Below are positions 1-13,879 of a DNA stretch of 13,879 nucleotides, piece by piece. Each line of letters opens with the position of its first letter. Within the stretch, counting starts at the first letter, position 1. The notes below the pieces were generated by a model. The model worked only from the letters and a program-made list of their open reading frames with translations, made no database searches and was not told the origin of the DNA. The stretch covers positions 1 through 13,879 of the forward strand of contig JBLDXI010000139.1 in assembly GCA_047495785.1 (NCBI GenBank), in the 5' to 3' direction. This stretch comes from Lepidodermella squamata. Its lineage: Eukaryota > Animalia > Gastrotricha. Both the position numbers and the translations under genes were made by a program.

Positions 1-1035
1 TGCCGTCCAGGCCGCTATCCTGTCCGGTGACAAGGCTGAGGAGATCCAGGACCTGCTGCTTCTCGACGTTGCTCCTCTCACCCTCGGTATCGAAACTGCT
101 GGCGGTGTCATGACTGCACACATCTCGTGAGAGTCCACCATTCCGACCAAGCAGTCGCAAACCTTCACTACCTATTCGGACAACCAAACTGCTGTCTTGA
201 TTCAGGTAAATATTGATTAGAGATAACTAGCTTTTCGCTTGCCTTAATGATGAAGGATCCTTCCGGAGTCTTTGTGACGAGTACATTTTAAGGATCTAGA
301 CTGCCTTCCTTGAACTGATATTTTCAATATTTTCTCTTGTATTGAGTATTTTATTGGATTTGAGATTAATGTTACGCTTTTCTTTGTATTCAGGTCTACG
401 AAGGTGAGCGTGCCATGACCAAGGACAACAACCTGCTGGGCAAGTTCGAGCTGACCAGCATCCCGCCCGCCCCTCGTGGTGTTCCTCAGATCGACGTCAC
501 CTTCGATATTGATGCCAACGGTATCATGAACGTGTCGGCCGTCGAAAAGAGCACTGGTCGCGAGAACAAGATCACCATCACCAACGACAAGGGCCGTCTG
601 TCAAAGGACGACATCGAGCGCATGGTGAAGGATGCTGACAAGTACCGCGCTGAAGACGACAAGCAGAAGGAGCGCATTCAGTCGAAGAACGCTCTCGAGT
701 CGTACGTCTTCGCCATGAAGCAGTCGGTTGAAGACGAGAAGCTGAAGGACAAGATCAGCGACTCTGACCGTCAGACGATCCAGGACAAGTGCAAGGAAAT
801 GCTGGACTGGCTCGACAAGAACCAGCTGGCCGAGAAGGAAGAGTTCGACCACAAGCAGAAGGAACTCGAGGGCGTCTGCAATCCGATCATCATGAAGGCC
901 TACCAAGCCGGTGGTGGTGCTCCTGGTGGCATGCCTGGCGGTATGCCCGGTGGTATGCCTGGCGCCGGTGGTGCTCCCGGAGCTGGTGGTGCGAGCAGCG
1001 GCCGCGGTGGCCCGACCATTGAGGAAGTCGATTAA
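1..1035 (+). pseudogene. hsp70: Partial Hsp70/Hsc70 copy (end of exon 2 1-205, intron 206-393, exon 3 394-1035) with in-frame TGA at 128-130
   Basis: Matches the minus-strand gene except 118-134, where [10 protein letters not shown] becomes TAHIS*ESTI. Donor CAG|GTAAAT at 205/206, acceptor TTCAG|GTC at 393/394. The stop could be a sequencing or assembly error. Confidence 0.7.
247..318 (+). ncRNA. Candidate intronic box C/D snoRNA (left-arm copy)
   Basis: Box C ATGATGA 247-253, D'-like CGGA 264-267, C'-like GTGACGA 274-280, box D CTGA 315-318. Guide CTGCCTTCCTTG 301-312 is complementary to conserved 18S CAAGGAAGGCAG. Internal stem GATCCTT/AAGGATC (256-262/290-296). Confidence 0.72.
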
Positions 1036-1295
1036 ATCGCTAATGAATGAACAATCAAATGCATCTCGAATTTCTATAAGAATTTATGTGTCGAACTGAA
1101 AATCAATGTCATCACATGTTTAGTTCGTCCTTTTGTCGGCATAGTAAAACAGGAAAGACATTGCCCTCAGTCATGTTTTATTCAAAAAATACTTATAATG
1201 TTATGTTTTTGTAAGCGAGGCTATCCGGAAAATAGCCGAAAAATCTAGTACATTCAGTATCGGTGTGATGTCGAATTGTGATGCTAAGCATAGAA

Positions 1296-1301
1296 AATAA
1301 A
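1296..1301 (+). promoter_or_regulatory. Possible polyadenylation signal of hsp70 (second AATAAA at 1387-1392; mirrors 5695-5700 and 5604-5609 on minus strand)
   Basis: AATAAA about 260 nt after the stop codon. Confidence 0.4.
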
Positions 1302-1610
1302 GCAACATCAGAATTATATTATGGTCTTGAATTATATATGTCACTGCACGTTTGAGTTGAGAGTAAGTGCAAATACAATCAACATCAATAAAACATCAGA
1401 CTAAGCTCATCAGAATGTGTTTTTTGCGTGTCTTGAAAACCTTACGAGTTTTTTTACCAGGTTCTATGACTAGGTGCTTACTTCCACATGGTCAGATCAA
1501 GGAAACGTATATTACAAGGGTATGACAATTAAACGCGCCTGGTTTATATAAACATTCGCTGAATCATAGCGGTCTCATAGATAGATGAATCGATTAAAAT
1601 ATGTGCATAG

Positions 1611-3335
1611 TAGCCGCTTTTACACTACAAGCACATATGTATTTCTGACTGTTCATAGTAATGAAGTCCACACAGTACCGTCAGATGGGGCGACTTTGGA
1701 CAGTGGGGTGACATTGCCACGGAAAAATGGGGCGACTTTCGCATAGCCATATCTCAGAGGTATCAAGATAAAGACCCCTTGAGTGGGATACCGTTGGAAA
1801 GCCCGAGAAAAGACCAACTGGAATGTCTTGAACATACTTCAGCCTTTAACAATACCTGGTAATTAAACACAGGTAAAGTTGAGCGACAAAATACACTTTT
1901 CGGCAGAATATAGATGACTCTAAAGTCGACCAGGTGTGCTCAAAATGAAAAGACCTTGTCATTTTCGAGCAGCCCCCGACACAAGCTATCCAGCGGTACC
2001 CAACTTGTGAGGTATCCACCTTTCCACCTGCGGTTTGAGTTAGGGCAAAGTCACCCCATCTGCATCTAAACCGTACTCAGGGTCACTTTGCCACCCTTCC
2101 ACGTCATTTATCAAGGTACATACGGCCCAAAAGGTTCCACGACGTATATAATTAAATTCTCCATCATCAGGGCTTTCCATTGACATCCTACTTGACATGT
2201 ATCATGTCTGAGAAAATGACGTCGTGTGTAATCTAAACTCGATCGCAAAAACCTATGGCAATGTCACCCCCATGGCCAAAGTCGCCCCATCTGACGGTAG
2301 TATTAGGTGTTGCGCAATCGCCGCAAGCGATGAAAATGCCAAGTTAAATTTTAATTTTTTGGAAATCAGAGTTCCAATTTGAAGGTCACTGAAATTTTGG
2401 AGGTACATTGAGGTATTGAAGGTATATTGAAGTAAGTATATTGATGGTAATATTTATTAAGATAATGGCGATGAGAGATTTCTGTCATTTTTGTCAATAA
2501 TATAATTAAGTTGGCCACAGCGGTAAATTTGGACCCAGAAATTATAAAAATCCCTATAATATATCAAAAATATATATCAGCTAGTGATCATGGCTCCTCT
2601 TATCGCTTCTTGAGATTAGACTCGGCATTTTAAATAAATTTCTAGCATTAATTGGCAGCTAAGCCAAAAAAGATTTCCTGCTCGACAAAAAATATTTCGA
2701 TTGAAATTTTTTTCTTATTTGATTACAATTTTGGCTTCGACTTCTTTGATAAGAATGCTCAGTTGAATTTATTATTTTTGGGTCTGAGGTTCCAAGCTGA
2801 AGAAATTAAGGTGGATAATCCGCGGAGAAAATCGATTATTTCCGGCCGAACAAGCCCTTTATTAAGCTTCTAATTATTGTTTTAAAATTTGAGAGCCACA
2901 GCAATATTTTCGTGTCTACCTCACCGCCTAATTTGAAAAATTTCTTTGTTATTTATCTCATTTTGGATGCATCCAGATTGTATGCCCTGTTTATGGAAAA
3001 TTTGATTACAGGCCTCAAAAACAGTAATTTAAGTCAATTTTTTGTATCAACGGTAGGTATTTTCATTTTTCTTTCAAAATAACTGCAATTATTGGCAAGT
3101 TATTTTCCCGAGGGATGGAGAAGCAATCAAAAGGCATAGTGACCAATTTTCCCGAATTTTTGCATCATTCTCAATAATTATAAAAAATATTTGATACCTT
3201 CAAAACCCGTAAAACCTTGAAAGATAAAAAGCGAGAAAACTCGAGTTTGAGTATTGCGCAATCAATTATTTGTCTTAATTAATGACGCACATATTAATTA
3301 CACTTCATACTTACGCTCTCGTGTAAAAGCGGCTA
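1611..3335. mobile_element. Putative non-autonomous DNA transposon bounded by 15-bp inverted repeats TAGCCGCTTTTACAC/GTGTAAAAGCGGCTA
   Basis: IR at 1611-1625 and 3321-3335. Flanking direct repeat TAGTA (1608-1612, 3334-3338) overlaps the IR ends. No coding capacity. Confidence 0.5.
1678..2297. mobile_element. 620-bp MITE, Tc1/mariner superfamily-like (probably pogo-type)
   Basis: 22-bp perfect TIR CCGTCAGATGGGGCGACTTTGG, extending imperfectly to about 42 bp through GGGGTGACATTGCCA. TA duplication at 1676-1677 and 2298-2299. Internal repeats of GGGGYGACWTT; no transposase. Confidence 0.88.
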
Positions 3336-3670: not shown

Positions 3671-5385
3671 TACACGAGAGCGTAAGTATGAAGTGTAATT
3701 AATATGTGCGTCATTAATTAAGACAAATAATTGATTGCGTAATACTCAAACTCGAGTTTTCTCGCTTTTTATCTTTCAAGGTTTTACGGGTTTTGAAGGT
3801 ATCAAATATTTTTTATAATTATTGAGAATGATGCAAAAATTCGGGAAAATTGGTCACTATGCCTTTTGATTGCTTCTCCATCCCTCGGGAAAATAACTTG
3901 CCAATAATTGCAGTTATTTTGAAAGAAAAATGAAAATACCTACCGTTGATACAAAAAATTGACTTAAATTACTGTTTTTGAGGCCTGTAATCAAATTTTC
4001 CATAAACAGGGCATACAATCTGGATGCATCCAAAATGAGATAAATAACAAAGAAATTTTTCAAATTAGGCGGTGAGGTAGACACGAAAATATTGCTGTGG
4101 CTCTCAAATTTTAAAACAATAATTAGAAGCTTAATAAAGGGCTTGTTCGGCCGGAAATAATCGATTTTCTCCGCGGATTATCCACCTTAATTTCTTCAGC
4201 TTGGAACCTCAGACCCAAAAATAATAAATTCAACTGAGCATTCTTATCAAAGAAGTCGAAGCCAAAATTGTAATCAAATAAGAAAAAAATTTCAATCGAA
4301 ATATTTTTTGTCGAGCAGGAAATCTTTTTTGGCTTAGCTGCCAATTAATGCTAGAAATTTATTTAAAATGCCGAGTCTAATCTCAAGAAGCGATAAGAGG
4401 AGCCATGATCACTAGCTGATATATATTTTTGATATATTATAGGGATTTTTATAATTTCTGGGTCCAAATTTACCGCTGTGGCCAACTTAATTATATTATT
4501 GACAAAAATGACAGAAATCTCTCATCGCCATTATCTTAATAAATATTACCATCAATATACTTACTTCAATATACCTTCAATACCTCAATGTACCTCCAAA
4601 ATTTCAGTGACCTTCAAATTGGAACTCTGATTTCCAAAAAATTAAAATTTAACTTGGCATTTTCATCGCTTGCGGCGATTGCGCAACACCTAATACTACC
4701 GTCAGATGGGGCGACTTTGGCCATGGGGGTGACATTGCCATAGGTTTTTGCGATCGAGTTTAGATTACACACGACGTCATTTTCTCAGACATGATACATG
4801 TCAAGTAGGATGTCAATGGAAAGCCCTGATGATGGAGAATTTAATTATATACGTCGTGGAACCTTTTGGGCCGTATGTACCTTGATAAATGACGTGGAAG
4901 GGTGGCAAAGTGACCCTGAGTACGGTTTAGATGCAGATGGGGTGACTTTGCCCTAACTCAAACCGCAGGTGGAAAGGTGGATACCTCACAAGTTGGGTAC
5001 CGCTGGATAGCTTGTGTCGGGGGCTGCTCGAAAATGACAAGGTCTTTTCATTTTGAGCACACCTGGTCGACTTTAGAGTCATCTATATTCTGCCGAAAAG
5101 TGTATTTTGTCGCTCAACTTTACCTGTGTTTAATTACCAGGTATTGTTAAAGGCTGAAGTATGTTCAAGACATTCCAGTTGGTCTTTTCTCGGGCTTTCC
5201 AACGGTATCCCACTCAAGGGGTCTTTATCTTGATACCTCTGAGATATGGCTATGCGAAAGTCGCCCCATTTTTCCGTGGCAATGTCACCCCACTGTCCAA
5301 AGTCGCCCCATCTGACGGTACTGTGTGGACTTCATTACTATGAACAGTCAGAAATACATATGTGCTTGTAGTGTAAAAGCGGCTA
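3671..5385. mobile_element. Mirror copy of the putative TIR element, lacking the last 10 nt of its inner IR
   Basis: Outer IR GTGTAAAAGCGGCTA at 5371-5385; the inner end is cut at the palindrome junction and only TACAC remains. Confidence 0.45.
4699..5318. mobile_element. Mirror copy of the 620-bp MITE
   Basis: TA|CCGTCAGATGGGG at 4697-4711 and CCCCATCTGACGG|TA ending at 5320. Confidence 0.88.
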
Positions 5386-5960
5386 CTATGCACATATTTT
5401 AATCGATTCATCTATCTATGAGACCGCTATGATTCAGCGAATGTTTATATAAACCAGGCGCGTTTAATTGTCATACCCTTGTAATATACGTTTCCTTGAT
5501 CTGACCATGTGGAAGTAAGCACCTAGTCATAGAACCTGGTAAAAAAACTCGTAAGGTTTTCAAGACACGCAAAAAACACATTCTGATGAGCTTAGTCTGA
5601 TGTTTTATTGATGTTGATTGTATTTGCACTTACTCTCAACTCAAACGTGCAGTGACATATATAATTCAAGACCATAATATAATTCTGATGTTGCTTTATT
5701 TTCTATGCTTAGCATCACAATTCGACATCACACCGATACTGAATGTACTAGATTTTTCGGCTATTTTCCGGATAGCCTCGCTTACAAAAACATAACATTA
5801 TAAGTATTTTTTGAATAAAACATGACTGAGGGCAATGTCTTTCCTGTTTTACTATGCCGACAAAAGGACGAACTAAACATGTGATGACATTGATTTTCAG
5901 TTCGACACATAAATTCTTATAGAAATTCGAGATGCATTTGATTGTTCATTCATTAGCGAT

Positions 5961-8171
5961 TTAATCGACTTCCTCAATGGTCGGGCCACCGCGGCCGCTG
6001 CTCGCACCACCAGCTCCGGGAGCACCACCGGCGCCAGGCATACCACCGGGCATACCGCCAGGCATGCCACCAGGAGCACCACCACCGGCTTGGTAGGCCT
6101 TCATGATGATCGGATTGCAGACGCCCTCGAGTTCCTTCTGCTTGTGGTCGAACTCTTCCTTCTCGGCCAGCTGGTTCTTGTCGAGCCAGTCCAGCATTTC
6201 CTTGCACTTGTCCTGGATCGTCTGACGGTCAGAGTCGCTGATCTTGTCCTTCAGCTTCTCGTCTTCAACCGACTGCTTCATGGCGAAGACGTACGACTCG
6301 AGAGCGTTCTTCGACTGAATGCGCTCCTTCTGCTTGTCGTCTTCAGCGCGGTACTTGTCAGCATCCTTCACCATGCGCTCGATGTCGTCCTTTGACAGAC
6401 GGCCCTTGTCGTTGGTGATGGTGATCTTGTTCTCGCGACCAGTGCTCTTTTCGACGGCCGACACGTTCATGATACCGTTGGCATCAATATCGAAGGTGAC
6501 GTCGATCTGAGGAACACCACGAGGGGCGGGCGGGATGCTGGTCAGCTCGAACTTGCCCAGCAGGTTGTTGTCCTTGGTCATGGCACGCTCACCTTCGTAG
6601 ACCTGAATACAAAGAAAAGCGTAACATTAATCTCAAATCCAATAAAATACTCAATACAAGAGAAAATATTGAAAATATCAGTTCAAGGAAGGCAGTCTAG
6701 ATCCTTAAAATGTACTCGTCACAAAGACTCCGGAAGGATCCTTCATCATTAAGGCAAGCGAAAAGCTAGTTATCTCTAATCAATATTTACCTGAATCAAG
6801 ACAGCAGTTTGGTTGTCCGAATAGGTAGTGAAGGTTTGCGACTGCTTGGTCGGAATGGTGGTGTTGCGCTTGATGATAGCAGTCATGACACCGCCAGCAG
6901 TTTCGATACCGAGGGTGAGAGGAGCAACGTCGAGAAGCAGCAGGTCCTGGATCTCCTCAGCCTTGTCACCGGACAGGATAGCGGCCTGGACGGCAGCACC
7001 GTAGGCGACGGCTTCGTCGGGGTTGATCGACTTGTTGAGCTCCTTGCCGTTGAAGAAGTCTTGCAGCAGCTTCTGGACCTTCGGGATACGAGTAGAACCA
7101 CCGACCAACACAACTTCGTGAATTTGGGCCTTGTCCATCTTAGCATCACGCAGTGACTTTTCGACGGGCTCGAGGGTGCCGCGGAACAAGTCAGCGTTCA
7201 GCTCTTCGAAACGAGCACGGGTGATGTTCGAGTAGAAATCAATGCCGTCATACAGCGAATCGATTTCAACAGAGGCCTGGGTGCTGGACGAGAGGGAACG
7301 CTTCGCACGCTCGCAAGCGGTACGCAGACGACGGAGGGCACGCTTGTTCTCCGAGATGTCCTTCTTGTTCTTGCGCTTGAATTCTTCGACGAAGTAGTTG
7401 ACCATGCGGTTATCGAAATCTTCACCACCCAAGTGAGTATCACCAGCAGTAGACTTGACTTCGAAGATACCGTCTTCGATGGTCAGGATGGAGACATCGA
7501 AGGTACCACCTCCCAAGTCGAAGATGAGAACGTTGCGCTCACCACCAACCTTCTTGTCAAGACCGTAGGCAATGGCGGCGGCAGTCGGTTCGTTGATGAT
7601 GCGGAGGACATTCATGCCAGAGATGGTGCCGGCATCCTTGGTAGCTTGACGCTGCGAGTCGTTGAAATACGCAGGGACAGTAACGACAGCGTTAGTGACT
7701 TTCTTGCCCAAGTAGGCTTCAGCGATCTCCTTCATCTTCGTGAGGACCATGGCAGAGATTTCTTCGGGGAAGAACGTCTTGGTCTCACCCTTGTACAACA
7801 CCTGGATTTTCGGCTTGCCACTGTCGGCAACAACCTTGAACGGCCAGTGCTTCATGTCGCTCTGGACCACGGGGTCATCAAAACGACGGCCGATGAGACG
7901 CTTCGCGTCGAAGACGGTGTTTTCAGGGTTCATGGCGACCTGGTTCTTCGCGGCATCACCGATCAACCTCTCGGTGTCGGTGAAGGCTACGTAGGACGGC
8001 GTAGTCCTGTTACCCTGGTCGTTGGCGATGATTTCAACTGTAAAAATGCGTAATTAGGTCAAAATCCAAGTAAATTATTTGGGATAACATACCCTTTCCG
8101 TGTTGAAAGACACCGACGCAGGAGTAAGTAGTACCCAAATCAATACCAATCGCGGGAGCTTTAGCAGCCAT
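5961..8171 (-). CDS. hsp70: Cytosolic Hsp70/Hsc70 chaperone, 655 aa; exons 8171-8093, 8037-6791, 6602-5961
   Basis: Starts [26 protein letters not shown]|[19 protein letters not shown]. Contains signatures [14 protein letters not shown] and [18 protein letters not shown] repeats and C-terminal [12 protein letters not shown] introns 8092-8038 (55 bp) and 6790-6603 (188 bp) restore the frame (79+1247+642=1968 nt). Introns and GGMP repeats suggest the cognate (HSPA8-like) type. Confidence 0.97.
6678..6749 (-). ncRNA. Candidate intronic box C/D snoRNA in hsp70 intron 2 (intact host copy)
   Basis: Mirror of 247-318, in sense orientation to the host gene; box D lies 75 nt upstream of the 3' splice site. 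Confidence 0.72.
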
Positions 8172-8288: not shown

Positions 8289-8295
8289 ATATATA
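8289..8295 (-). promoter_or_regulatory. hsp70 TATA box (TATATAT)
   Basis: About 120 nt upstream of the ATG. A pyrimidine-rich initiator-like TCTCTTCACTCTTC lies about 30 nt downstream (8255-8268, minus). Confidence 0.6.
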
Positions 8296-8314
8296 CGGCG
8301 TTGCCGGCACACGC

Positions 8315-8338
8315 TCAGGATCAGGATCAGGATCAGGA
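8315..8338 (-). repeat. (TCCTGA)4 microsatellite tail of the LINE
   Basis: TCAGGA x4 on the plus strand, at the expected LINE 3' terminus. Confidence 0.85.
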
Positions 8339-8751
8339 ATTACGATTTCTCCTCGCCCTGACGGACTCAAGCTTTCGCCATAAGGCGGAGCTTGTGAGAA
8401 AATCGCGAGCTTACGCTCTAGGAAAGTTTGAACTGGTTTACTAACTACTTGATTGAAATCCCTACCCCTGGTACTCCAGTTATTGCTGACTGTTTCTCCA
8501 GGGCCCAGGCATTAGTGCCCAGGTGGCTTTTCCACTCACTCAGCGAAGCCTACAAACGCCGTCGTAGCAAGAAAGCTACCAAAAGACTAGTTGGAGAATT
8601 ATTTACAAGAGTAGAGATAATTTACAAGAGGTAAATCCACGGAGCTAAAATATAGATAATTTAATGACGGAGCTATAAAAGAAAATAAAGTATATTACAT
8701 TTGGTTGAGTATAGGCTTTGAAAAATATAAATAGAAATTTGGAAAACTCAT

Positions 8752-9714
8752 TTAGTTTGGCACGTAGTTGTAGACGAAGGCGGCTTTGGAGTACGGATTG
8801 AACGCGACCTGCGGCTGCAGAGAGGCGTTGAGTTCCTTCTTCTTTCGCTCGCTCTTCACCTTGATGATGGCGTCGTGTTTGGCCTGTTCGCGTAGGAATT
8901 CGAGCGTGGCTTGCCGGCACGCCTTTGTGGAAGCGGACAGCCTGATCTTCGCTGGCAGCTGGTTCCACCACTGGATGGCCTTGGTTGGGAACGAGCGCTG
9001 GCCTGTGGCGAGCTTGCACGATGGTTTGACGTACTTCCCGGTGGCGGCGCCTCGAGTGTTGTGGTCATGCTGTTGGTTCATCGGCTTGACTAGCGACGAG
9101 AGTGCCTCGGGGGTCTCAGGATCCCTGCTGCACTTCCACATGGTTGTAGCCAGGTGGACCAGTCGTTTGCCTTGCAGATTCACCCATCGCAATCGCACGA
9201 GAACTTCATCGGCGGGCACGTCAGGACTGACGTCGAGAACGGCACGAACGGCTTTGTTTTGCGCGTGTTGAAGTCGATCCAGCTGGGTCTTGCAGCCCTG
9301 ATCGATGACGGCGTCGCAGTAGTTGAACTTCGACCCGATGATGCCGTCGTACATCATTGTTCGAGTCTTCAGGTCGGTGTGCCGAGCCGCTTTACGTAGT
9401 GCGTAGGTACCACTTCTTGCGGCTTTGATCAGATGATCGACGTGCTTTTCCATGGTGAGCTTTGAGTCCAGATAGACTCCCAGGATCTTCACGTGGTCAA
9501 GTGGCGGCAGATCGACTTCACCGAATCGAATTTCTGGAGCAGAAGCCTGTTGGTTAGACAAAAACATATAATTAGATTTGTCCCGATTCACTTTAAGACA
9601 GTTGGCGTGTAACCAATCGCCGATACTGCGAAGGTCCGCCTCTAGCTTCGCCTTGACTTCTTCAGGCGTCTTCCCACGGGCCACGATCGTTGTGTCGTCG
9701 GCGAACAGCGATGC
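8752..9714 (-). pseudogene. C-terminal part of LINE ORF2 reverse transcriptase (no native start; endonuclease and RT N-terminus missing)
   Basis: 310-aa ORF 8752..9684 extended upstream to the FADD motif; in-frame TAG at 9735-9733 in flanking DNA. Confidence 0.88.
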
Positions 9715-9729
9715 GATGCTGTTTTTGCA

Positions 9730-9744
9730 TTTCTAGAACCTTCC
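9730..9744. promoter_or_regulatory. Heat-shock element (three perfect alternating nGAAn units)
   Basis: tTTCtaGAAccTTCc matches the HSF consensus and lies immediately beyond the LINE 5' end. Confidence 0.75.
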
Positions 9745-9745
9745 A

Positions 9746-9759
9746 TCACGTGACTCAGC
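9746..9759. promoter_or_regulatory. Overlapping E-box (TCACGTGA) and AP-1/ARE-like site (TGACTCAGC)
   Basis: CACGTG 9747-9752 and TGACTCA 9751-9757, directly adjacent to the HSE. Confidence 0.5.
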
Positions 9760-10613: not shown

Positions 10614-12883
<2,270 letters not shown>

Positions 12884-13879
12884 GTAAATTCCCAAGCTTG
12901 ATTTCCAACCTGATTTTTGCTAAGTTTTCTCCCAAAATTCGATTTCTATTATTTTCGACGCAAGAAACCAATCGAATTGTAATTGGGTTCTGATTGAGAT
13001 GTCGCGATTTTTCTTTTGAAATATGGTCGAGCTTGTCCTGGCGTTTGAAAATCTTTGAATATAGATATTCGAAAATTTCACTGACTGTCAGTTTTATTTT
13101 CAGAATGTAGTTCGTTTATAGAACAGCGTGTTCTAAAACTTGGGCGATTTTTTTTAAATTCAACTATTTTCTAAATTGAACCCACCGAGAGAAAATTCCA
13201 ACGTTTATCCGCGGCAGAAACTGAAAATTTACCGGAGAAAACCTGGAAAACCCCGATGGTAACTGGTTCGTTAATTTTTGGTATTTTACCCGGTTGGACT
13301 AAAAATATCTCCGGATGTTGCTAATCCCATTGAGAAATCCCATACTTTATTCTCGTGATTTTTTTTTAATTTTCTACCTCGAGAAACTTCTAACCTCGAG
13401 CCCAATTCAATTTTATTAGCTAAAATAAATCCGCAAAAACAAAACCGAGCCACAAATTTGGCGCAAAGAAACGAAAAACATGTGAATCATGTCTGATTAT
13501 TGGAGCCAGCAGAACTTTGAACTTGAAATATGCAATTGAGTCTAAATTCAATTGAATAAATAAATATGCATCATACGACACCATACTTAAGCCACAGTCA
13601 AATCTAGCTGCAAAAACAAAATAAATCGACGTACAATTAAGCATGTTTTTAAAAGAAGCGCATAGTCTCTAGTTTTTCGATAATTCATAAATCGAATTAG
13701 ATAACACGTTTAGTTCCATACTCTAGTGGAAAAGCCCTTATATAATAGCCTCTATGATATCATGTAAATATTAACAAAGAAAAGAGGTAGAAAAAGGAAA
13801 AGCAGTAATTTAGAACAGTTAGAATCACGCGTAGAAAATATCGTTTGAGATTATCGTCACCTTGCTGATCGGCACGAAG

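What the first reader, a model, noticed from the sequence alone, without database searches (positions are those of the whole stretch)
6678..6749. Candidate unannotated box C/D snoRNA in hsp70 intron 2 with an unusual predicted 18S target
Seen (left-copy coordinates): box C ATGATGA 247, D'/C'-like CGGA and GTGACGA enclosed by a 7-bp stem, guide CTGCCTTCCTTG, then AA and box D CTGA. Known: vertebrate hsc70 (HSPA8) introns host U14/SNORD14. U14 domain B and SNORD83A/snR52 pair with this same 18S segment (ACAUCCAAGGAAGGCAG). Inference: the D+5 rule points to the second A of CAAGG, 3 nt 3' of the U14 Cm site and 3 nt 5' of the snR52/SNORD83A Am site. U14 domain A (CATTCGCAG) is absent, so this may be a shifted or new guide in a conserved host gene.
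Basis: partly seen in the sequence, partly recalled or inferred. Interest (0 to 1): 0.8.

Follow-up and report, generated by a model that had tools for sequence, protein, structure and literature searches.

The report
U14-derived snoRNA candidate in hsc70 intron
The second intron of an animal hsc70 gene holds a 72-base box C/D small nucleolar RNA candidate in the same intron position where a snail carries a normal U14; it has lost the U14 processing element and is predicted to methylate 18S rRNA three bases from the U14 site, but nothing yet shows that the RNA is made.

Summary
On the minus strand at 6678-6749 there is box C AUGAUGA, a D'-like CGGA, a C'-like GUGACGA, the 12-nt guide CUGCCUUCCUUG, a spacer AA and box D CUGA. 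The element lies in sense inside the 188-nt GT-AG intron 2 (6603-6790) of an hsc70 gene, 75 nt upstream of the 3' splice site.

The boxes alone occur at chance level. The full pattern never appeared in 200 shuffles.

It is not a U14 by profile. Rfam gives no SNORD14 match at E up to 10, and a U14 model I built scores it 10 bits. Domain A is absent.

Comparative data nevertheless point to descent from U14:
- The snail Biomphalaria has a canonical U14 (74 bits) in the intron at the same codon position (VLIQ|VYEGER).
- The closest syntenic relative, L016, lacks this intron but carries a canonical U14 in another hsc70 intron with the same layout.

I read it as a U14-derived box C/D guide whose D+5 target is the second A of CCAAGG. 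That site is not listed as methylated in the Arabidopsis table I read.

A decaying U14 relic remains a serious rival.

The scan also noted a similar candidate in another HSC70 intron of this genome (s1-421588).

The parts
6678..6749 (-). 72-nt box C/D snoRNA candidate (U14-derived, no domain A)
   Evidence: Sequence read; the full pattern had 0 matches in 200 shuffles; no Rfam family; custom U14 model 10 bits, E 0.67.
6743..6749 (-). box C AUGAUGA
6729..6732 (-). D'-like CGGA (degenerate, unproven)
   Evidence: motif reading only
6716..6722 (-). C'-like GUGACGA (one mismatch to UGAUGA)
   Evidence: GUGACG also occurs in the U14 of L016
6684..6695 (-). D guide CUGCCUUCCUUG, antisense to 18S CAAGGAAGGCAG; the fifth base upstream of box D (U at 6686) would pair with the second A of CCAAGG
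   Evidence: Nine of the 12 nt are shared with domain B of the canonical U14s. The remaining CAG of 18S is from general knowledge of this conserved segment.
6678..6681 (-). box D CUGA, preceded by the spacer AA (6682-6683)
6603..6790 (-). hsc70 intron 2, 188 nt, GT-AG, phase 0 between VLIQ and VYEGERAM; 41 nt before box C and 75 nt after box D
   Evidence: The same intron position is seen in Biomphalaria L026, Xenopus L029, L018 and L031.
6791..8037 (-). hsc70 exon 2 (codons about 27-441)
   Evidence: 96% identical to P0001 and P0002, about 90% to mollusc hsc70
8093..8171 (-). hsc70 exon 1 ([26 protein letters not shown]), followed by the 55-nt intron 1 (8038-8092)
247..318 (+). mirror copy of the candidate in the left arm of the perfect inverted repeat; not independent

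Best explanation
This is a U14-derived intronic box C/D snoRNA gene. It sits in an ancient hsc70 intron position (between VLIQ and VYEGER) that hosts a canonical U14 in a snail.

In this lineage the copy kept perfect boxes C and D and a 12-nt guide next to box D. It lost domain A, the element of U14 that acts in 18S processing. The 3' end of domain B is 3 nt shorter (GAUGU became AA).

Inferred mechanism:
1. The intron is spliced out.
2. Core box C/D proteins (Snu13, Nop56, Nop58, fibrillarin) assemble on the C/D motif. This would be helped by its position 75 nt upstream of the 3' splice site.
3. Exonucleases trim the debranched intron to a roughly 72-nt RNA.
4. The guide pairs with 18S CAAGGAAGGCAG, and fibrillarin methylates the ribose of the base opposite the fifth guide base upstream of box D. 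That base is the second A of CCAAGG, 3 nt 3' of the U14 site (human A465, yeast A417 and Arabidopsis A421 by offset).

Shown here: the motifs, the intron, the host gene, the positional match to a canonical U14, and the failure of the U14 membership tests.
Inferred only: expression, RNP assembly and methylation.
For: Motifs:
- Boxes C and D are perfect, and a 12-nt guide ends 2 nt before box D. The full pattern never appeared in 200 shuffles.

Position in the intron:
- The element is in sense orientation in a GT-AG intron of hsc70, with 41 nt before it and 75 nt after it.
- True U14s in relatives have the same layout. In L016 the figures are 45 and 78 nt. The two Biomphalaria copies have about 74 and 86 nt downstream.
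- Box C/D snoRNAs normally sit at a conserved distance from the 3' splice site, about 50 nt upstream of the branch point (PMC8162545).

Descent from U14:
- Biomphalaria has a canonical U14 (74.2 bits, above the Rfam gathering score) in the intron at exactly this codon position.
- Mercenaria has three U14 copies in its hsc70 gene, and the syntenic relative L016 has one.
- Three U14 copies lie in the hsc70 introns of human, mouse and rat (PMC7277114).

Uneven conservation:
- Against canonical U14s the domain A region is scrambled, while 23 nt of boxes plus guide are intact.
- Three extra pairs (CUG with CAG), absent from the L016 and mollusc U14s, offset the loss of GAUGU.

Intron retention:
- The gene has only two introns. 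The other, intron 1, is 55 nt.
- This gene lacks five intron positions seen in the comparison genes (after F68, K137, A373 and G510, and at DKNQ).

Precedent:
- The two U14 domains work independently, and fly U14 lacks domain B (PMC6315972).
Against:
- No relative with this variant was found. L016 lacks the intron altogether. L018/L019 and L031/L032 have the same intron without any snoRNA, so the intron can persist without one.
- No Rfam family matches. The best is Afu_294 at 14.5 bits, E 0.62.
- The terminal stem is only 2 bp.
- The predicted folds are no better than shuffles, and one of them pairs the guide with the internal AAGGAU.
- Beyond the boxes and the guide, similarity to U14 is weak (z 1.8-2.9).
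- The predicted A is absent from the Arabidopsis Nm table (PMC8053127). Searching for 'A465' in the human RiboMeth-seq paper found nothing (PMC5027482).
- The species' own 18S was not available.
Confidence: 0.5

Rival explanations
1. It is a decaying U14 pseudogene. An old intronic U14 copy lost domain A and part of domain B after another copy took over (for example one like the canonical U14 in the DKNQ|LAEK intron of L016). The remaining boxes and guide have simply not mutated yet. Any RNA made from it would have no role.
For: - Domain A is gone and domain B is truncated.
- No conservation of this form was found anywhere.
- The terminal stem is only 2 bp.
- The same intron persists without a snoRNA in other animals.
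- The predicted target is not in the Arabidopsis Nm table I read.
Against: - 23 nt of boxes plus guide are perfect, while the domain A stretch is about half changed. Neutral decay should hit both.
- The guide gained or kept three 5' pairs (CUG), so a 12-bp duplex survives the 3-nt shortening.
- The spacing to the splice sites is kept as in true U14s.
Confidence: 0.3
2. It is a functional box C/D snoRNA with a different job. It might be an orphan or chaperone-type RNA that pairs with the U14 region of 18S without methylating the +3 A. It might use its 5' element (GAUCCUUCCG, antisense to the 18S 3'-terminal CGGAAGGAUC). Or it might derive from a SNORD83/snR52-type guide through a 3-nt insertion rather than from U14.
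For: - D'-like and C'-like motifs are present.
- There is a 10-nt match to the 18S 3' end. The 18S sequence is from memory, and I estimate the chance at about 6%.
- On sequence alone the guide is as close to a SNORD83-type guide plus GAA as to U14 domain B minus 3 nt (my arithmetic).
Against: - The 5' element is self-complementary with 6700-6706, so it may be structural.
- The host intron position matches that of a U14, not of SNORD83.
- No Rfam family supports another identity.
Confidence: 0.15
3. It is a chance assembly of motifs in an AT-rich intron, unrelated to snoRNAs.
For: Box C and box D at this spacing occur at chance level in the window, and the fold z-scores are not significant.
Against: - The full pattern with the 12-nt guide had 0 matches in 200 shuffles.
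- The guide hits the very 18S segment that U14 targets, in the known U14 host gene, at an intron position that holds a U14 in Biomphalaria.
Confidence: 0.03

Closest known systems
U14 / SNORD14 (Rfam RF00016), intron-encoded in hsc70 (HSPA8)
   Same: - Same host gene, and in sense orientation in an intron.
- The intron position matches that of a canonical Biomphalaria U14.
- Boxes C and D are present.
- The D-side guide pairs with the same 18S segment: CCUUCCUUG is shared with domain B.
- The distances to the splice sites are similar.
   Different: - No domain A.
- Domain B lacks GAUGU, so the D+5 target moves 3 nt (from C to A).
- At 72 nt it is shorter than the 88-96 nt of the U14s compared.
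- No SNORD14 match at E up to 10, and 10 bits with a U14 model built from six invertebrate U14s.
Drosophila U14, which lacks domain B (as described in PMC6315972)
   Same: It shows that the two U14 functions can be separated in evolution, each U14-type RNA keeping only one antisense element.
   Different: The fly RNA keeps domain A and loses the methylation guide. Here it is the reverse, and the retained guide is also shifted.
SNORD83A / snR52 (guide for 18S Am468 in human, A420 in yeast)
   Same: It pairs with the overlapping 18S segment AAGGAAGGCAG. Human A468 is assigned to SNORD83A (PMC5027482).
   Different: - The predicted target here is 3 nt further 5'.
- The host differs: from memory, SNORD83 lies in RPL3.
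- No Rfam hit to that family.

Membership tests
box C/D snoRNA (2'-O-methylation guide) | Box C (RUGAUGA) near the 5' end and box D (CUGA) near the 3' end | tested here: met
   AUGAUGA at 6743-6749 and CUGA at 6678-6681, 72 nt end to end. The boxes alone are at chance level.
box C/D snoRNA (2'-O-methylation guide) | A 5',3'-terminal stem (or an external stem) that brings C and D together | tested here: inconclusive
   Only 2 bp next to the boxes. An 8-nt complement (AAUAUUGA with UCAAUAUU) exists in the intron flanks. The folds are no better than shuffles. The true U14 of L016 also lacks a good terminal stem.
box C/D snoRNA (2'-O-methylation guide) | At least 10 nt antisense to rRNA, ending 1-3 nt upstream of box D | tested here: met
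   12 nt, CUGCCUUCCUUG, ending 2 nt before box D. Nine of them are shared with domain B of six canonical U14s. The species' own 18S was not available.
box C/D snoRNA (2'-O-methylation guide) | Sense orientation in a spliced host intron, at the usual distance from the 3' splice site | tested here: met
   GT-AG intron 6603-6790 with 75 nt downstream of box D. The U14s compared have 74-86 nt downstream. Rule cited from PMC8162545.
box C/D snoRNA (2'-O-methylation guide) | Accumulates as a discrete small RNA bound by fibrillarin, Nop56, Nop58 and Snu13 | not testable with these tools
box C/D snoRNA (2'-O-methylation guide) | The target nucleotide is 2'-O-methylated | not testable with these tools
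   No RiboMeth-seq data for this species. The equivalent A is absent from the Arabidopsis table.
U14 / SNORD14 (RF00016) | Domain A: about 13 nt antisense to 18S (AUUCGCrGUUUCC) in the 5' half | tested here: not met
   Absent. The aligned stretch reads CCUUCCGGAGUCUUU.
U14 / SNORD14 (RF00016) | Domain B CCUUCCUUGGAUGU directly before box D, placing the U14 C at D+5 | tested here: not met
   GAUGU is replaced by AA, so D+5 falls on the A 3 nt downstream.
U14 / SNORD14 (RF00016) | Covariance-model score | tested here: not met
   No SNORD14 hit at gathering score or at E up to 10. The custom model R1 gives 10.1 bits, E 0.67, against 68 bits for L016.
U14 / SNORD14 (RF00016) | Encoded in an hsc70 intron | tested here: met
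   Intron 2 of hsc70, at the same codon position as the Biomphalaria U14. Vertebrate precedent in PMC7277114.
SNORD83 / snR52 | The guide places the first A of GGAAGG (human A468) at the fifth position | tested here: not met
   By arithmetic the fifth position pairs 3 nt further 5'. No Rfam hit.

The most novel reading that the evidence does not exclude
In this animal lineage the two jobs of U14 have been split between paralogous intronic copies in hsc70. A canonical copy stays in one intron, as seen in the syntenic relative L016. The copy in the VLIQ|VYEGER intron has become a pure methylation guide. A 3-nt shortening next to box D slid its target to a new 18S site, the second A of CCAAGG, which is absent from the Arabidopsis Nm table I read and which I know of no report of in yeast or human. 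That would be a natural, datable example of a new rRNA methylation site arising by guide sliding.
Probability: 0.35. Interest if true: 0.5.

Novelty: new member of a known kind. Interest (0 to 1): 0.35.

Why it matters
If the RNA is real, it shows how a multifunctional snoRNA can be taken apart. U14 both chaperones 18S processing and guides one methylation. Here one copy would have kept only the guide, and a small deletion would have moved its target.

It would add a lineage-specific 2'-O-methyl site to a universally conserved 18S segment that already carries two known sites.

The side result also has value. The calls here found canonical U14 in hsc70 introns of two molluscs and of an unnamed relative of this species. 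The hsc70-U14 association, known from human, mouse and rat, is therefore much older than mammals.

If the element is a relic, it is an ordinary decaying snoRNA copy.

Tried and rejected
1. Rfam, whole window at gathering score and at E up to 10 around the candidate. No family. The MIR396, sR17, sR47 and Afu_294 matches are weak and not significant.

2. Pattern scan of metagenome contigs for box C, the guide, NN and CUGA. The 15 hits are all GC-rich and look like bacterial coding sequence; 10 are copies of one conserved stretch. None is a homologue.

3. Read laying on 6500-6900.

4. Protein searches exon by exon:
- Exon 2 gave L016 and L017.
- Part of exon 3 gave loci with the same intron but no snoRNA (L018/L019, L031/L032) and loci with a nearby but different intron (L020-L025).
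- The neighbouring POLQ-like helicase gene gave nothing above 49% identity.

5. A custom U14 covariance model. It recovers the U14 of L016 (one of the six sequences it was built from) but not the candidate. It finds no canonical U14 in the parts of the window searched, and none in L018, L020-L022 or L028-L032.

6. A viral-contig scan for an 18S reference: nothing found.

7. A Xenopus hsc70-like paralogue (L029). It has the intron positions but no U14.

8. Global alignment of the candidate to U14s with shuffled controls. Only weak signal beyond the boxes and guide (z 1.8-2.9).

9. Rejected as evidence, because the minimum-energy folds prefer other pairings and are no better than shuffles.

Full report
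**What is there**

Read on the minus strand, window 6749 to 6678 is a 72-nt element:
- box C AUGAUGA (6743-6749)
- 20 nt that include a D'-like CGGA (6729-6732)
- a C'-like GUGACGA (6716-6722)
- 20 nt
- the guide CUGCCUUCCUUG (6684-6695)
- the spacer AA
- box D CUGA (6678-6681)

The 'left copy' at 247-318 is the mirror image in a 100% identical 3325-nt inverted repeat that runs to the start of the window. It is not a second, independent copy.

**The host gene**

The minus strand carries an hsc70 gene:
- exon 1: 8171-8093
- intron 1: 8092-8038 (55 nt)
- exon 2: 8037-6791
- intron 2: 6790-6603 (188 nt, GT-AG, phase 0, between ...VLIQ and VYEGERAM...)
- exon 3: 6602-5961, ending PTIEEVD

Exon 2 is 96% identical to two unnamed proteins, from a metagenome and a metatranscriptome, and about 90% identical to mollusc and vertebrate hsc70. 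The candidate lies in sense in intron 2. There are 41 nt before box C and 75 nt after box D.

I searched the exons separately and never joined them.

**Is it more than chance?**

Box C and box D at this spacing are expected 1.27 times in a window of this composition, so the boxes alone mean nothing. With the 12-nt guide added, the pattern had no match in 200 shuffles.

The guide is antisense to exactly the 18S segment that U14 domain B pairs with. It sits in the gene that is the classical U14 host: three U14 copies lie in the hsc70 introns of human, mouse and rat (PMC7277114). Chance is not a credible explanation. Descent from a snoRNA is.

**Is it a U14? No, by every test I could run**
- Rfam finds nothing at gathering score, and no SNORD14 match at E up to 10 in 401 nt or 111 nt around it.
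- I built a covariance model from six invertebrate U14s that I found. It scores the candidate 10.1 bits (E 0.67), using only the box C end. The same model scores the U14 of L016, one of its six training sequences, at 68 bits.
- Domain A (AUUCGCrGUUUCC) is absent. The aligned stretch reads CCUUCCGGAGUCUUU.
- Domain B lacks its last five bases.

**Comparative evidence for descent from U14**

1. The closest relative locus, L016, is an ENA metagenome contig. It is syntenic: its hsc70 is 96% identical in protein and 81% in DNA, and it lies head to head with a POLQ-like helicase gene, as in the window. The helicase is 71% identical.
   - L016 has no intron at VLIQ|VYEG.
   - It has a 211-nt intron at DKNQ|LAEK, which holds a canonical U14 with domain A (AUUCGCGGUUUCC) and domain B (CCUUCCUUGGAUGU then CUGA). 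Rfam SNORD14 scores it 39 bits, E 1e-6.
   - That U14 has 45 nt upstream and 78 nt downstream in its intron.
2. The Biomphalaria hsc70 gene (L026) has two canonical U14s, at 74 and 66 bits. One lies in the intron at exactly VLIQ|VYEGER, the position of window intron 2.
3. Mercenaria hsc70 (L027) has three U14s in the intron at NDKG|RLSK.

The hsc70-U14 association is therefore old in animals, and the candidate occupies a U14-hosting intron position.

The Xenopus paralogue L029 shows that both the VLIQ and the RNQ|MAEK intron positions are shared with vertebrates.

The spacing of the candidate within its intron (41/72/75 nt) mirrors that of the true U14s. It also fits the rule that intronic box C/D snoRNAs sit at a fixed distance from the 3' splice site (PMC8162545).

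**Predicted function**

Count upstream from box D: A1, A2, G3, U4, U5. G3 pairs with the second C of CCAAGG, and U5 with the second A.

In the canonical U14s the fifth base is the G that pairs with the first C. The predicted target is therefore 3 nt 3' of the U14 site and 3 nt 5' of the SNORD83A/snR52 site. By offset this is human A465, where A468 is assigned to SNORD83A (PMC5027482), and Arabidopsis A421.

The Arabidopsis 18S table lists C418 (U14) but no A421 (PMC8053127). Searching for 'A465' in the human paper found nothing.

The duplex is 12 bp. Three of these pairs (CUG with CAG) are absent from the L016 and mollusc U14s. They make up for the lost GAUGU.

**Functional guide or relic?**

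For function:
- Boxes and guide (23 nt) are perfect, while the domain A stretch is about half changed.
- The intron architecture is kept.
- The gene has lost every other intron position seen in the comparison genes (after F68, K137, A373 and G510, and at DKNQ). It keeps only this intron and the 55-nt intron 1.
- U14 domains are known to be separable, and fly U14 lacks domain B (PMC6315972).

Against function:
- There are no RNA data.
- No relative with this variant was found in any search.
- The same intron exists without a snoRNA in L018/L019 (77 nt) and L031/L032 (about 325 nt).
- The terminal stem is only 2 bp.
- The folds are no better than shuffles, and one of them pairs the guide with the internal AAGGAU.
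- The species' own 18S was not available.

My weights are: functional U14-derived methylation guide 0.5, decaying U14 copy 0.3, functional with another role or origin 0.15, chance 0.03.

**Earlier notes of the scan**

One note (s1-421588) reports another box C/D candidate in an HSC70 intron elsewhere in this genome, also aimed at the U14 region and not a canonical U14. I could not see its sequence. It is a lead for the decisive comparison, not support. The palindrome note (s1-407865) agrees.

**Limits and rules observed**
- Searches of exon 3 used 5964-6545 only.
- I met no contig that I took for human.
- The organism is coded in the run table. The closest named hsc70 proteins are molluscan, at 90%.
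- The 18S sequence beyond the nine bases implied by U14 domain B, the site numbers by offset (human A465, yeast A417) and the SNORD83 host gene come from my own knowledge.

**Verdict**

This is a real, non-random feature of a known kind: an intronic box C/D snoRNA candidate derived from U14. The mildly unusual twist is the loss of domain A and the 3-nt target shift. Expression and function are untested.

Noticed in passing
window 1-3325 and 3671-6995: A perfect (100%) 3325-nt inverted repeat with a 345-nt centre, reaching the first base of the window. It duplicates the 3' part of hsc70 tail to tail. It looks like a fold-back assembly artefact or a very recent duplication.
   Followed up: partly
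window 10868-12993 (+): A POLQ-like helicase gene (DEAD, Helicase_C, HTH_61) lies head to head with hsc70. The same gene pair occurs in the relative L016 (helicase 71% identical), so the two loci are syntenic.
   Followed up: partly
window 8752-9684 (-): A 310-aa ORF between hsc70 and the helicase gene has no Pfam hit at E 0.001. Another note of the scan reads 8289-9759 as a LINE insertion in the hsc70 promoter.
   Followed up: no
window 8315-8339 (-): A short CCTGAT microsatellite (four units) about 150 nt upstream of the hsc70 start codon.
   Followed up: no
L028:3657-3876: The amphioxus hsc70 (HSPA8) gene carries an H/ACA snoRNA, SNORA73 (123.5 bits), in the intron after ...AMTKDN, and no U14.
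   Followed up: no
L026:1072-1168 and 2526-2626; L027:5898-5987, 6763-6854, 11111-11199: Canonical U14 copies in hsc70 introns of the snail Biomphalaria (two) and the clam Mercenaria (three, all in one large intron). The hsc70-U14 link is therefore not limited to vertebrates.
   Followed up: yes
window 6731-6740 (-): GAUCCUUCCG in the 5' half of the candidate is antisense to the 18S 3'-terminal CGGAAGGAUC (18S sequence from memory). I estimate the chance of such a 10-mer match against about 6 kb of rRNA at roughly 6%. The stretch also pairs within the RNA.
   Followed up: partly
L030:3440-3520: An hsc70-like locus without the VLIQ intron appears to change reading frame right after VLIQ (...GTTTTTGAAGGGTGAACGTGG...). 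The contig has low coverage (2.44x in its name), so this could be a pseudogene or a sequencing error.
   Followed up: no
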